Below, one piece after another: positions 3,331-49,135 of a DNA stretch of 64,000 nucleotides. The translations under genes were made by a program, and so were the position numbers. Positions within the stretch are counted from its first letter, which is position 1. Every line of letters begins with the position of its first letter. The stretch is taken from positions 3,286,001-3,350,000 of the forward strand of contig NC_047026.1 in NCBI RefSeq assembly GCF_902652985.1, written 5' to 3'. The notes under the pieces were generated by a model, which saw only the letters and a program-made list of their open reading frames with translations, did no database searches and had not been told where the DNA came from. The DNA is from Pecten maximus (taxonomy: Eukaryota).

Positions 3331-5311
3331 ATGGCTGAAGGAGGAACCCCTCACGATCTTTCTGATAGTCCAAGGGAAGCCCGGCTGTTAGATTGTCCGA
3401 TTTGTCTGGAGCAGCTGCACGAACCAAAGTCACTCCCGTGTCTTCATTCCTTCTGTCAGGGATGTCTGTCCACCTTCATCACCAAAGACCTGTCGGGGAA
3501 GATGGCGTCGGCAACTGCCTTCCCTTGTCCTGTGTGTAGGAAGATGACACAGCCTGTCAACCCGTCGGAGGACAAGGGGAAATGGGCGCAACAATTCCCA
3601 GTCAATGTAATAGTGAGAGATCTGGTAAAGGCCCCGTCACTTGAGCCGATGTACTGTAAGCCTTGCGGGAAGAAAGGGAAACCTGGGATCCCGGCAGCTA
3701 TATGGTGTGAAAAATGCAACGCGTTCTTCTGTGAAACATGTAAAGTCGATTTTCACGATTTGATTCACGAAGAATGTGAAAAAGTAGACATAACAGGGAA
3801 GGAAGGAATTACTCAGCGACACGGAACAGGACAGATCCGATGTGAAAAACACACAAAGAAGATGTGTTATTATTGTGAGGATCATCAGATACTTAGCTGT
3901 AGTAGATGTATCACCATAGACCACAGACGATGTGACGTAGTGACAACGACACAGGAATATTGTGACAAACTGAAGACGGAGTCACGACTGGAGGATCGGA
4001 AAGAATCACTACAGAAGACAAAGGAGGCTATCAAGTTGCTCGTCAAAACATTTGGAGAGAAACTTCAAATCCTCCTGGAAGATCAAAATACCGGATTTGA
4101 CAGTTTAACAGATCTGCGAAAACAGGTCGACCTACGTCTTGACGCCATGCAGAAGGACATCACAGACAAACTGGTATCGTCTTATAAACAAGAGAAGGAA
4201 AATCTGGACTTGTCTATTCAGAAATGTGAACGTCTGATGTCATCCATTGAGAATACAGTAGAAAGCTCCGAGATAGCAGTTCAGAGGAATGATAGCGTAA
4301 ACACAGTCTTGATGTATCAGAGGCCAAGCGGAAATGGAGTCTTACCAGAACCTGATCACGGAAATAAGGAAGTCTTTCGCTTCTGTCAGAATAAAACATG
4401 TCGTCGATCCCAGTCTGGTCAGGTTGGATAAGGATAGTCCACTGTCATTAGGAAGCGTCATTATAGAGGAAAAACCAGAACAGCTCCCAAAAGGAATAAG
4501 TACCATGAGGCCTTTGTGCGAATGTGACGTGAAGGAAGTAGTCAAGTTCAGTATCAAGTGTCCATCAGATGGAGGCAGTTGTTATGCAGCTGGTATTGTT
4601 TACTTACCTGATGATCATATCGTTGTAGTAGATTACAACAATAACAAAATAAAGTTGTTTACAACTTCAGGGAAATGTTTGGATGAGATGAAGGTTCCAG
4701 GAAAACCGTTTGATATGTGTTGTGTAGATGATGACACAGTAGCGGCCGCTATCGTCAATTCAGAAATACACATAATCAAAGTGAACCATGCAAAACTAAC
4801 TTTGTCTTCCAAAATAAAACTTTCTAACGGAGCACACCCACGTGGTATCACTTACTCAAATGAGGCGTTTACTGTGAGTACTCCGACCGATGTGTATAGA
4901 GTCAGTAAGAATGGAGTTCCGAACACAATTGTTTCTCCTCCTAGTCGCTGCTTACACCTTGCGTGCGACCCAAGGACAGGACACATATATGGAAGTCAAT
5001 CGACATCCGTGGCTGGTGATGTAGCTGTATACAGACTGTCAGACGGTAAACTTACAAGCATATCAAAAGTTGGTTTGCTGAAGGACGCGTTTGGTGTAGA
5101 CGTCGACAGGGATGGCAATGTGTACGTGTGTGGGTGGGCGTCCAATAACGTGGTACAGATGTCAGGCGACGGGACAAACGCCAGAGAGCTGCTGACGTCA
5201 TCAGACGGTGTAGACAGACCGATCGCGATATCTGTGTGTGGGAACAAATTCGTGGTTACAAACCAATCATCACAAAATCGTAGTGAAGTGCGAGTGTTTG
5301 AACTTTACTGA
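3331..5311 (+). pseudogene. TRIM (RING-B-box1-B-box2-coiled coil-NHL-like) copy 1, frameshifted
   Basis: C3HC4 RING (CPIC..CLHSFCQGC..CPVC), two B-boxes and a coiled coil in ORF 3331-4431. The propeller is in ORF 4334-5311. There is a 2-bp AG deletion at about 4319-4322 (TATCAGAGGCC versus TATCAGAGAGGCC in paralogues). Confidence 0.9.
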
Positions 5312-47146: not shown

Positions 47147-49135
47147 ATGGCTGAAGGCGGAACCCCTCACGATATTCCCGATTGTCCCGGACCTCCCAGG
47201 GAAGCCCGGCTGTTAGATTGTCCGATTTGTCTGGAGCAGTTGCACGAACCAAAGTCCCTCCCGTGTCTTCATTCCTTCTGTCAGGAGTGTCTGTCCACCT
47301 TTATCACCAAAGACCTGTCGGGGAAGATGGCGTCGGCGACTGCCTTCCCTTGTCCTGTGTGTAGGAAGATGACACAGCCGGTCAACCCGTCTGAGGACAA
47401 GGAGAAATGGGCTCAACAATTCCCAGCCAATGCAATAGTGAAAGATCTGGTAAAGGAAGCGACAATGGAACCGATGTATTGTAAACCTTGCGGAGGGAAA
47501 GGGAATACTGGGATACCGGCAGCGATCTGGTGTAAAATATGCAATGTGTTCTTTTGTGATACATGTAAAGTCGATTTTCATGATTGGATTCACAAAGAAT
47601 GTGAAACAGTAGATGTAACACGGAAGGAAGGATTTGTTCAGCGACAAGTAACAGAACAGATCCGATGTGAAAAGCATACGAAGGAGGTCGATTACTATTG
47701 TGAGGACCATCATATACTTGGCTGTAGTAGATGTATCACCATAGACCACAGACGATGTGACGAAGTGACAACGACACAGGAATACTGTGACAAACTGAAA
47801 ACGGAGTCACGACTGGAGGATCGAAAAGAATTACTACAAAAGACAATGGAGGATATCAAGTTACTCGTCAAAACATTTGGCGAGAAACTTCAAATCCTCC
47901 TAGAAGATCAAAATTCTGGATTTGACAGTTTAACAGATCTGCGAAAACAGGTCGACCTACAACTTGACGCCATGCAAAAGGACATCACAGACAAACTGGT
48001 ATCGTCTTATAAACAAGAAAAGGAAAATCTGGACTTGTCTATACAGAAATGTGAACGTCTGATGTCATCCATTGAGAATACAGTAGAAAGCTCCGAGACA
48101 GCTGTTCAGAGGAATGATAGCGTAAACACAATATTGATGTATCAGAGAGGCCAAGTAGAGATGGAGTCCTACCAGAACCTGATCACGGAAATGAGGAATT
48201 CTTTTGCTTCTGTCAGAATAAAACATGTCATCGATCCCAGTCTGGTCAGGTTGGATACGGATAGTCCACTGTCGTTAGGAAACGTCATTATAGAGAAAAA
48301 CCCAGAACAGCTCCCAAACGAAATAGGAACCACGAAGCCATTGTGCGAATGTGACGTGCAGGAGGTCGGCAAGTTCAGTATCAAGTGTCCATCAGATGGA
48401 CACGATTGTTTTGCAAATGGCATTGTTTACTTACCTGATGATCACATCGTTGTTTCAGATTGGAACAATAAGAAAATAAAGTTGTTTACAGCTTCAGGGA
48501 AATGTTTGGATGAGATGAAGGTTACTGGAAACCCGTATGATATGTGTTGTATAGATGATGACACTGTAGCGGCCGCTATCTACAATTCTGAAATACTCAT
48601 AATCAAAGTGAACCATGCAAAACTAACTTTGTCTTCCAAAATAAAACTTTCTATCGGAGCAGACCCATATGGTATCACTTACTCAAATGAGGCGTTTACT
48701 GTGAGTACTCAGACCGATGTGTATAGAGTCAGTAAGAATGGAGTTCCGAACACAATTGTTTCTTATCCTAATCGCTGCTTACACCTTGCGTGCGACCCAA
48801 GGACAGGACACATATATGGAAGTCAATTGACATCCAAGGATGGTGATGTAGCTGTATACAGACTGTCAGACGGTAAACTTACAAACATATCAAAAGTCGG
48901 TATGCTGAGGACCGCATCTGGTGTGGACGTCGACAGTGACGGCAATGTGTACGTGTGTGGGAATAGGTCTAATAACGTGGTACAGATGTCAAGGGACGGG
49001 ACAAACGTCAGAGAGCTGCTGACGTCATCAGACGGTGTAGACAGACCGAGGGCTATATCTGTGTGTGGGAACAAATTCGTGGTGACCAATGAATCAAAGA
49101 ACAGAAATGAAGTATATGTGTTTGAACTTTACTGA
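47147..49135 (+). CDS. TRIM (RING-B-box1-B-box2-coiled coil-NHL-like) copy 4, 662 aa
   Basis: Intact ORF with the same domain motifs. Confidence 0.93.
   Translation: MAEGGTPHDIPDCPGPPREARLLDCPICLEQLHEPKSLPCLHSFCQECLSTFITKDLSGKMASATAFPCPVCRKMTQPVNPSEDKEKWAQQFPANAIVKDLVKEATMEPMYCKPCGGKGNTGIPAAIWCKICNVFFCDTCKVDFHDWIHKECETVDVTRKEGFVQRQVTEQIRCEKHTKEVDYYCEDHHILGCSRCITIDHRRCDEVTTTQEYCDKLKTESRLEDRKELLQKTMEDIKLLVKTFGEKLQILLEDQNSGFDSLTDLRKQVDLQLDAMQKDITDKLVSSYKQEKENLDLSIQKCERLMSSIENTVESSETAVQRNDSVNTILMYQRGQVEMESYQNLITEMRNSFASVRIKHVIDPSLVRLDTDSPLSLGNVIIEKNPEQLPNEIGTTKPLCECDVQEVGKFSIKCPSDGHDCFANGIVYLPDDHIVVSDWNNKKIKLFTASGKCLDEMKVTGNPYDMCCIDDDTVAAAIYNSEILIIKVNHAKLTLSSKIKLSIGADPYGITYSNEAFTVSTQTDVYRVSKNGVPNTIVSYPNRCLHLACDPRTGHIYGSQLTSKDGDVAVYRLSDGKLTNISKVGMLRTASGVDVDSDGNVYVCGNRSNNVVQMSRDGTNVRELLTSSDGVDRPRAISVCGNKFVVTNESKNRNEVYVFELY

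What the first reader, a model, noticed from the sequence alone, without database searches (positions are those of the whole stretch)
3640..49135. Paralogues are patchwork mosaics: all three possible pairings alternate along the gene
Seen: the B-box1 region pairs 2+4 (EATMEPMYCKPCGGKGN) against 1+3 (CKPCGKKGKPG). B-box2 pairs 1+2 (KKMCYY) against 3+4 (KEVDYY). Blade 1 pairs 2+3 (GRDCDAAG). Blade 3 pairs 1+2 (SNGAHPRG) against 3+4 (SI.A.PYG). The blade 3-4 linker pairs 1+4 (SKNGVPNTIVS..RCLH) against 2+3 (KDGVS.KIASY..CYH). The C-terminus pairs 1+3 (TNQSSQNR) against 2+4 (TNESKN, one codon shorter). The flanks are also discordant: the 3' HINE insert is in 2+3 only, while the upstream 4 kb pairs 2+4. 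No single duplication tree explains this. Inference: frequent short-tract gene conversion shuffles blade-sized specificity modules combinatorially.
Basis: partly seen in the sequence, partly recalled or inferred. Interest (0 to 1): 0.78.

Follow-up and report, generated by a model that had tools for sequence, protein, structure and literature searches.

The report
Mosaic scallop TRIM-NHL gene copies
Four neighbouring king-scallop genes for ubiquitin-ligase-like proteins are true patchworks of one another, made by ordinary DNA copying and unequal exchange between repeated genes rather than by a new diversity-making system.

Summary
Four intronless RING/B-box/coiled-coil/NHL genes of Pecten maximus are 90.5-93.1% identical. 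Their 80 informative sites support all three pairings (21/41/18) in tight blocks: 22 runs against 50.4±4.0 expected, with 0 of 100,000 shuffles as low. PHI, run-length and segment-tree tests agree.

The four-copy view is incomplete. The subfamily has nine members, five of them frame-disrupted. The closest partners of c2 and c3 lie 75-80 kb outside the window.

"Short-tract, blade-sized modules" is only partly right:
- The strongest exchanges are long two-sided tracts that run into non-coding flanks, about 4.2, 6.4 and 1.5-2.0 kb.
- There are also older patches of roughly 17-180 nt.
- Breakpoints do not follow blade borders.

A 41.8-kb unplaced contig looks like the other haplotype. It carries two genes instead of four, and the junction lies in a cluster-specific 26-bp minisatellite.

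Synonymous divergence from two outgroup paralogues is about 0.15 in RING/coiled coil but about 1.5 in the propeller.

Short-read contigs could not test for assembly chimeras.

Verdict: a new member of a known kind. The scan reported similar conversion patches in another array of this genome (s1-788498).

The parts
3331..5311 (+). Copy c1. TRIM-NHL-like gene, frame-disrupted: a 2-nt loss in an AGAGAG run near 4319-4323 and a 9-nt in-frame deletion near codon 13.
16420..18408 (+). Copy c2, intact, 662 aa. Its 5' part is c4-like, its middle is a mosaic (identical to p10 over alignment columns 537-718), and its 3' part is p8-like.
37829..39820 (+). Copy c3, intact, 663 aa. RING, B-box and NHL matches in Pfam; propeller matches to Pizza6, TRIM71, Thin and TRIM2 chains.
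47147..49135 (+). Copy c4, intact, 662 aa.
12753..16928 (+). c2 side of the c2-c4 near-identical tract. The unique parts are about 99% identical. It runs from the unique upstream DNA through the minisatellite to about codon 170. The c4 side is roughly 42900-47655.
17950..24350 (+). c2 side of a ~6.4-kb tract that differs by about 0.5% from pseudogene p8 (C12:3227295-3235922, about 75 kb away). Diverged homologous DNA lies on both sides.
39471..41430 (+). c3 side of a tract shared with pseudogene p10 (about 80 kb away). There are 0 mismatches to about 40930 and near-identity to about 41430, with 2-16% divergence on both sides.
48737..48784 (+). c4 side of the 14|23 patch (codons 531-546, from blade 3 strand D to blade 4 strand A). 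The c1 side is 4910-4957. This type is found only in c1 and c4 in the assembly.
16953..16980 (+). B-box2 dimorphic patch (codons 178-187) in c2. The same patch is at 3855-3882 (c1), 38362-38389 (c3) and 47680-47707 (c4). The KKMC type is shared by c1, c2, p10 and o6; the KEVD type is in the other copies.
39772..39788 (+). C-terminal patch (codons 648-654, inferred blade 6 B-C loop) in c3. c2, c4 and p8 share a 3-nt deletion here.
2661..3215 (+). 26-bp minisatellite upstream of c1, 21 copies.
13785..16278 (+). 26-bp minisatellite upstream of c2, 94 copies.
30347..30597 (+). Orphan 26-bp minisatellite block, 10 copies. This is the point where contig C3456 rejoins the window.
37480..37685 (+). 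Short minisatellite remnant directly upstream of c3. A further remnant lies at 36707-36882.
43932..47004 (+). 26-bp minisatellite upstream of c4, 115 copies.
18704..19013 (+). 3' insert of unknown kind in c2. Its counterpart in c3 is 40086-40422. It is present in 6 of 9 copies and absent from c1, c4 and U2.
8798..9183 (+). Gene relic covering CDS nt ~961-1345, 87-91% identical to all nine copies, with no recent partner.
22810..23383 (+). Older relic of the propeller end, about 71-73% identical to the nine copies.
33236..33925 (-). Reverse-transcriptase ORF (RVT_1). It lies inside DNA of roughly 30598-37479 that separates the orphan minisatellite block from c3; these limits are approximate and inferred.

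Best explanation
The four genes belong to an 11-gene tandem cluster of intronless TRIM-NHL-like genes on Pecten maximus scaffold C12. Nine are close paralogues and two (o5, o6) are more distant. The cluster evolves by germline ectopic recombination.

Three processes are superimposed:
(a) Recent long, two-sided copy events, either gene conversion or double crossover. They span 1.5-6.4 kb, start or end inside the coding sequence and run into the flanks. These produce most of the strong pairings.
(b) Older short patches of roughly 17-180 nt.
(c) Unequal crossover at a 26-bp minisatellite that lies about 115-140 bp upstream of every gene. This changes copy number: a probable other haplotype has two genes where the reference has four.

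Exchange keeps RING, B-box2 and coiled coil alike across the whole cluster. The B-box1 region and the NHL propeller stay diverse.

Shown: the mosaic, its significance, the tract extents, the minisatellite association and the collinearity of contig C3456. Inferred: germline timing, the direction of each transfer, that C3456 is an allele, and any gain in recognition diversity.
For: Clustering of the three pairings: 22 runs against 50.4±4.0, with 0 of 100,000 shuffles as low.

Zero-mismatch runs, tested with 2,000 permutations:
- c2-c4: 22 polymorphic sites among the four copies, global P<0.0005
- c3-p10: 75 sites over 329 nt
- U1-p8: 54 sites
- c2-p8: 46 sites, P=0.0015

Seven mismatch-tolerant fragments reach global P<0.05. 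PHI gives P<0.001. Delta-AIC is 414 for separate segment trees. Rm is 21 for the four copies and 58 for the nine.

Tracts continue into non-coding DNA and are two-sided.

Contig C3456 is collinear with the window region at 91-97%. It skips window 3216-30343, with the join inside the minisatellite.

The minisatellite core occurs in 11 of 30 family loci. These are exactly the 11 cluster genes, always upstream and in gene orientation. Genome-wide it is almost confined to this cluster and C3456.

dS from o6 to the intact copies is 0.146 (RING) and 0.154 (coiled coil), against 1.49 for codons 401-530.
Against: No read-level proof. The only runs served were short Logan contigs; the 32 pieces listed were 73-488 nt. 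In 19 of 20 places where they differed from c2 they carried a paralogue's letter, so they cannot tell the copies apart.

Each exact protein is on record from one contig only, so no independent assembly confirms them.

The assembly had three rounds of short-read polishing (passages). In principle this could copy letters between paralogues.

That C3456 is an allele rests on collinearity alone. Its 3-9% divergence from the window region is high for alleles.

Segment borders for the tree test were chosen after looking at the data. Rm is inflated by recurrent mutation at 8% divergence.
Confidence: 0.8

Rival explanations
1. Assembly or polishing chimera. The mosaics were made by consensus building or by short-read polishing that applied mis-mapped paralogue reads.
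For: The assembly used wtdbg2, Arrow and three freebayes rounds that applied homozygous non-reference edits (passages). At several places where c2 differs from most other copies, for example 17277 and 17510, no laid contig of any of the four runs showed the c2 letter. No independent assembly holds the exact proteins.
Against: The tracts include kilobases of non-coding flank. They carry a few real differences, about 0.5-1%, plus indels, rather than being identical copies. Older patches are 3-4% diverged. PacBio reads averaged about 10 kb (75.8 Gb in 7.25 M reads), several times the gene length. The separately assembled contig C3456 shows the same kind of mosaic, for example U1-p8 and U1-c3. Making the c2-c4 B-box1 block by polishing would need dozens of concordant edits.
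Confidence: 0.07
2. Unequal crossing-over and birth-and-death alone. Each mosaic border is a single crossover that made a hybrid gene, with no non-reciprocal conversion.
For: The long tracts reach into the flanks. There is a probable 2-versus-4 gene haplotype with its junction in the minisatellite. Gene relics exist and 5 of 9 copies are disrupted.
Against: The c3-p10 tract (1.5-2.0 kb) and the c2-p8 tract (6.4 kb) have diverged homologous DNA on both sides. The c1-c4 patch and the B-box2 patch are internal. One crossover cannot give a two-sided tract.
Confidence: 0.08
3. Parallel or convergent amino-acid selection produced the shared motifs without any exchange.
For: dN/dS is raised in the B-box1 region and in the propeller.
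Against: Synonymous sites co-vary inside the blocks: 6 of 22, 2 of 8 and 3 of 11. Identity continues into non-coding DNA.
Confidence: 0.01
4. A dedicated, possibly somatic, cassette-shuffling system that uses disrupted copies as donors to diversify expressed receptors.
For: Intact c2 and c3 share their newest tracts with disrupted p8 and p10, and the shared parts avoid the lesions. Variable positions concentrate in the propeller.
Against: Most of the exchanged DNA is non-coding. Breakpoints ignore blade borders. The direction of transfer is unknown. There are no tissue data. The pattern is what ordinary tandem arrays show.
Confidence: 0.04

Closest known systems
Gene conversion in zebrafish NLR-B30.2 and finTRIM families (Howe et al. 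2016, PMC4852459; passages read)
   Same: A large tandem family of intracellular recognition-type proteins. Conversion acts differently on different domains: it homogenises the scaffold, while tracts shorter than the recognition exon recombine variants.
   Different: The recognition domain here is an NHL propeller, not B30.2. The genes are intronless and the animal is a bivalve. The newest tracts are multi-kilobase and mostly non-coding. A cluster-specific minisatellite lies upstream of every copy.
TRIM-NHL proteins (TRIM71, TRIM2/3, Drosophila Thin)
   Same: RING, B-box and NHL matches. The propeller matches solved TRIM71, Thin and TRIM2/3 chains and the designed Pizza6 propeller at E 5e-7 to 8e-4. 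NCBI names the proteins TRIM56-like and TRIM25-like.
   Different: No filamin domain was seen. This is a lineage-specific, fast-evolving tandem family with many disrupted members, not a conserved single-copy regulator. Function is untested.
Concerted and birth-and-death evolution of tandem multigene families such as MHC and immunoglobulin V genes (recalled textbook knowledge; antibodies and MHC are mentioned)
   Same: Unequal crossover changes copy number, interlocus conversion makes mosaics, and pseudogenes take part.
   Different: Nothing here shows a specialised or somatic mechanism.
Earlier scan note s1-788498 (another array of this genome)
   Same: Conversion patches between B-box/NHL paralogues, judged there to be ordinary gene conversion.
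   Different: A different locus. I did not test that locus.

Membership tests
TRIM (RING, B-box, coiled coil) with C-terminal NHL propeller | N-terminal RING finger | tested here: met
   zf-RING_UBOX 35.5 bits (cut-off 25.2) and zf-C3HC4 33.6 bits (cut-off 21) at residues 25-72 of c3.
TRIM (RING, B-box, coiled coil) with C-terminal NHL propeller | B-box zinc finger(s) | tested here: inconclusive
   zf-B_box scores 21.7 bits at residues 170-203, below the 24.1 cut-off. The Cys/His columns C174, H177, C185, D187, H188, C193, C196, H201 and C204 are invariant in 23 family members, as is a second set from C112 to C152.
TRIM (RING, B-box, coiled coil) with C-terminal NHL propeller | Coiled coil after the B-boxes | not tested
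   No coiled-coil predictor was run.
TRIM (RING, B-box, coiled coil) with C-terminal NHL propeller | NHL-repeat beta-propeller | tested here: met
   Pfam NHL 21.5 bits (cut-off 20) at residues 421-445. 18 PDB sequences match at E<=0.01, among them Pizza6, TRIM71, Thin and TRIM2/3. The six blades were inferred from sequence only.
Interlocus (ectopic) gene conversion | Shared variants cluster more than chance allows | tested here: met
Interlocus (ectopic) gene conversion | Different segments support different trees | tested here: met
   Delta-AIC 414 with equal parameter numbers. The segment borders were chosen after inspection.
Interlocus (ectopic) gene conversion | The tract is bounded on both sides by diverged homologous sequence | tested here: met
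   The c3-p10, c2-p8 and c2-c4 tracts and the c1-c4 patch.
Interlocus (ectopic) gene conversion | Non-reciprocal transfer with a known donor and recipient | not testable with these tools
   This needs outgroup species, pedigrees or sperm typing.
Interlocus (ectopic) gene conversion | Junctions present on single long molecules | tested here: inconclusive
   Only short contigs were served. 19 of 20 differing letters were paralogue letters.
Unequal crossover / copy-number variation | Haplotypes with different copy numbers joined within a repeat | tested here: inconclusive
   C3456 is collinear with the region and skips 27 kb at the minisatellite. Whether it is an allele was not shown by coverage.
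Templated cassette diversification (chicken Ig type, recalled) | One-way copying from silent donors into an expressed locus, occurring somatically | not testable with these tools
   Disrupted copies are partners of intact ones. Direction and tissue are unknown.

The most novel reading that the evidence does not exclude
The C12 array is a germline cassette-exchange system. The cluster-specific 26-bp promoter-proximal minisatellite starts recombination. The five disrupted copies act as a reservoir of B-box1 and propeller segments that are copied into the intact genes. As a result, individual scallops carry different combinations and numbers (two-gene and four-gene haplotypes) of a variable intracellular recognition family.
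Probability: 0.1. Interest if true: 0.7.

Novelty: new member of a known kind. Interest (0 to 1): 0.35.

Why it matters
This is a clean, well-quantified case of how a bivalve expands and reshuffles a lineage-specific TRIM-NHL family. Conversion keeps the E3-ligase scaffold uniform: synonymous divergence is about 0.15 even to the more distant cluster members. The propeller is about ten times more diverged at synonymous sites. Copy number probably differs between the two haplotypes of one animal.

It also warns that gene trees, orthology calls and dN/dS site tests on such arrays are unreliable unless recombination is modelled.

The minisatellite upstream of every cluster gene is a concrete, testable candidate for a recombination or promoter element.

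The mechanism itself is textbook, and the same idea is already in print for zebrafish NLR-B30.2/finTRIM genes.

Tried and rejected
- Convergent selection was rejected because synonymous and non-coding sites share the pattern.
- I looked for outside donors of the c2/c4 B-box1 type and the c1/c4 patch in the whole assembly. None is closer than 87% and 91% respectively.
- The two gene relics in the window show no recent exchange.
- The 'HINE' or hammerhead reading of the 3' insert has no support. There are 0 Rfam matches at E<=1 in window 18400-19200. The gathering-level scan of the whole window gave only 9 tRNA matches.
- Read validation was uninformative. The four runs were all short Logan contigs, and the listed pieces stop at 16940-16988, near the c4-like to p10-like junction.
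- An exact-protein look-up found each protein on one contig only.
- Literature: seven searches found no paper on gene conversion in bivalve TRIM genes. Two candidate papers held only 'trimAl' or 'trimming'.
- Not run: the search for homologous proteins and the search of protein representatives, because they were costly and the claim does not rest on them. There was therefore no comparison with other scallop species.
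Full report
**What is there.** The window is G000:C12:3286001-3350000. The assembly has 918,306,378 bases in 3,983 scaffolds. These are exactly the figures of the Pecten maximus assembly of Kenny et al. 2020 (PMC7191990, passages). NCBI names the proteins 'TRIM56-like' and 'TRIM25-like [Pecten maximus]'.

Four intronless genes lie on the + strand:
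- c1 at 3331-5311
- c2 at 16420-18408
- c3 at 37829-39820
- c4 at 47147-49135

c3 has RING, B-box and NHL matches in Pfam. Its last 279 residues match solved NHL propellers: Pizza6, TRIM71, Thin and TRIM2/3. c1 is frame-disrupted by loss of an AG from an AGAGAG run.

**The observation.** In a 1,992-column alignment the copies are 90.5-93.1% identical. Of 80 informative sites, 21 support 12|34, 41 support 13|24 and 18 support 14|23.

These sites are not interleaved. They form 22 runs against 50.4±4.0 in 100,000 shuffles, and none was as low. The longest runs are 22, 11 and 8 sites, with P of 0, 0 and 0.0004. The blocks hold synonymous sites: 6 of 22, 2 of 8 and 3 of 11.

Other tests agree:
- PHI is 0.381 against 0.626±0.024.
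- The minimum number of recombination events by the four-gamete rule is 21. This is inflated by recurrent mutation.

The two flank statements also hold among the four copies.

**The wider family.** A search of the whole assembly with the c3 protein gave 68 matches at E<=1e-20. Nine copies are 89.6-95.7% identical in DNA:
- c1 to c4 in the window
- p11, p8 and p10, which lie 40-70 kb upstream on C12
- U1 and U2 on the unplaced contig C3456

Two more distant genes, o5 and o6 (about 80-84%), lie in the same cluster. Only 4 of the 9 keep an open frame: c2, c3, c4 and U1. The closest relatives of c3 are U1 (95.7%) and p10 (94.6%), not another window copy. The closest relative of c2 overall is p8 (94.0%). 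The three-pairings picture is therefore a slice through a larger network.

With nine copies:
- PHI is 0.286 against 0.502±0.010.
- Separate trees for eight segments beat one tree by 207 log-likelihood units at equal parameter number. I chose the borders after looking at the data.
- Seven pairwise fragments reach global P<0.05: c3-U1 at codons 4-399, c2-c4 at 5-170, c2-p8 at 400-658, c3-p10 at 531-658, c3-p8 at 82-450, U1-p8 at 23-399 and U2-p11 at 120-541.

**Size and nature of the exchanges.** The strong tracts do not stop at the coding sequence.

- c2 and c4 are about 99% identical in their unique parts from window ~12753, through the upstream minisatellite, to CDS nt ~500-530. Beyond that they differ by 5-16%. 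This one tract accounts for the 13|24 block in B-box1.
- c2 and p8 share an 8.6-kb homology of 97.2%. Within it, window ~17950-24350 differs by only about 0.5%, with diverged sequence on both sides.
- c3 and p10 have 0 mismatches from window 39471 to ~40930 and are nearly identical to ~41430. Divergence is 2-16% before and 5-11% after.

These are two-sided tracts of 1.5-6.4 kb. That is long conversion or double crossover, and mostly in non-coding DNA.

Smaller and older patches also exist:
- The B-box2 dimorphism at codons 178-187. One type is shared by c1, c2, p10 and o6; the other is in the remaining copies.
- The c1-c4 patch at codons 531-546, which has 4 differences in a 120-nt window where all the other close copies differ by 12-21.
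- The C-terminal patch with its 3-nt deletion, shared by c2, c4 and p8.

Neither the c2/c4 B-box1 type nor the c1/c4 patch type has another source in the assembly.

I therefore inferred the blades from the repeat pattern and from the Pizza6 alignment: 419-461, 462-502, 503-541, 542-586, 587-629 and 630-663. Tract ends lie at about codons 170, 400, 450, 531 and 541-546. Only the last is near a blade border. The units exchanged are much larger or much smaller than a blade.

**Selection and domain contrast.** Nei-Gojobori dN/dS is as follows:
- RING 0.20-0.28
- coiled coil 0.18-0.22
- B-box2 0.26-0.43
- B-box1 region 0.54-0.70
- propeller 0.67-0.76
- by blade: blades 1-4 0.88-1.73, blade 5 0.78, blade 6 0.23

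This fits either diversifying selection or relaxed constraint.

Synonymous divergence between o6 and the intact copies is 0.146 in RING and 0.154 in the coiled coil, against 0.50 in the B-box1 region and 1.49 at codons 401-530. The scaffold half is thus kept alike across the cluster while the propeller is not. This is the same domain-differential pattern described for zebrafish NLR-B30.2 genes (PMC4852459, passages).

**Copy-number change and the minisatellite.** A 26-bp repeat lies directly upstream of each gene, in 21, 94, 10, 7 and 115 copies in the window. Its core is present, upstream and in gene orientation, in 11 of the 30 family loci examined. These are exactly the eleven cluster genes, and it is in none of the 19 others. 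Genome-wide it is almost confined to this cluster and C3456, with weak arrays on four other scaffolds.

C3456 (41.8 kb) is collinear with the window region at 91-97%. However, it passes from the DNA upstream of c1, through a minisatellite, straight to the DNA that follows the orphan minisatellite block at window 30344-30597. It carries U1 at the c3 position and U2 before the c4 downstream flank.

The paper does not contain the word 'haplotig', so uncollapsed haplotypes are plausible. If C3456 is the other haplotype, it has two genes where the reference has four. In that case c3 and U1 would be alleles that agree to 1-3% upstream and over the first 1.2 kb of CDS but differ by 5-13% in the 3' part, and it is within this part that c3 equals p10.

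**What could not be settled.** The four runs laid on c2 were short Logan contigs. The listed pieces stop at the main junction. In 19 of 20 places their differing letter is that of a paralogue. They say nothing about chimeras. One run guessed to be RNA covers the gene and its 3' flank but not the 5' flank, and four runs on record as RNA hold 26-32% of the stretch's words. No independent assembly holds the exact proteins.

Against a polishing artefact stand four points: the kilobase non-coding extent of the tracts, their small but real differences, the older diverged patches, and the same kind of mosaic on the separately assembled C3456.

**Comparison and verdict.** This is interlocus gene conversion plus unequal crossover in a tandem family of TRIM-NHL-like genes. 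It is a known process in a family where I found no paper describing it for bivalves. The scan itself reported conversion patches in another array of this genome (s1-788498). The finding is real and well supported, but ordinary in kind.

Noticed in passing
window 2661-3215, 13785-16278, 30347-30597, 36707-36882, 37480-37685, 43932-47004: A 26-bp minisatellite holding a TATAA-like core lies about 115-140 bp upstream of every gene of this cluster. Array length ranges from about 200 bp to 3 kb. In the assembly it is almost confined to this cluster and contig C3456. It may act as a recombination substrate, a promoter element or both.
   Followed up: partly
L031-L034 (G000:C3456:1-40000): This unplaced 41.8-kb contig is collinear with the window but lacks a 27-kb segment holding c1 and c2. 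It is probably the other haplotype, with two genes instead of four.
   Followed up: partly
window 54006-62357: Nine tRNA-Phe(GAA) genes lie on the + strand within 8.4 kb. Eight have the same Rfam score. Other notes of the scan (s1-802652, s1-802980) claim hammerhead ribozymes among them, but no hammerhead reached Rfam's gathering score anywhere in the window.
   Followed up: partly
window ~30598-37479 (RT ORF 33236-33925, - strand): About 6.9 kb of DNA with a reverse-transcriptase ORF (RVT_1, E 2.8e-20) splits the minisatellite upstream of c3. It is also present in C3456.
   Followed up: partly
window 21846-22348: A tandem repeat of period 97/189 nt, about 5 copies, lies downstream of c2 inside the c2-p8 shared segment.
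   Followed up: no
C12:3227295-3235922 vs window 16385-24992; C12:3242804-3247091 vs window 37672-41923: p8 and p10 pair with c2 and c3 in the same order about 75-80 kb apart. This suggests a higher-order duplication of a multi-gene block, later overwritten in parts.
   Followed up: partly
window 17277, 17510, 17973 and other places where c2 differs from most copies: At several places where c2 differs from most other copies, no laid contig from any of four runs carried the c2 letter. This includes runs that may come from the reference animal. It could be bubble-popping in the contig build or errors in the assembly.
   Followed up: partly
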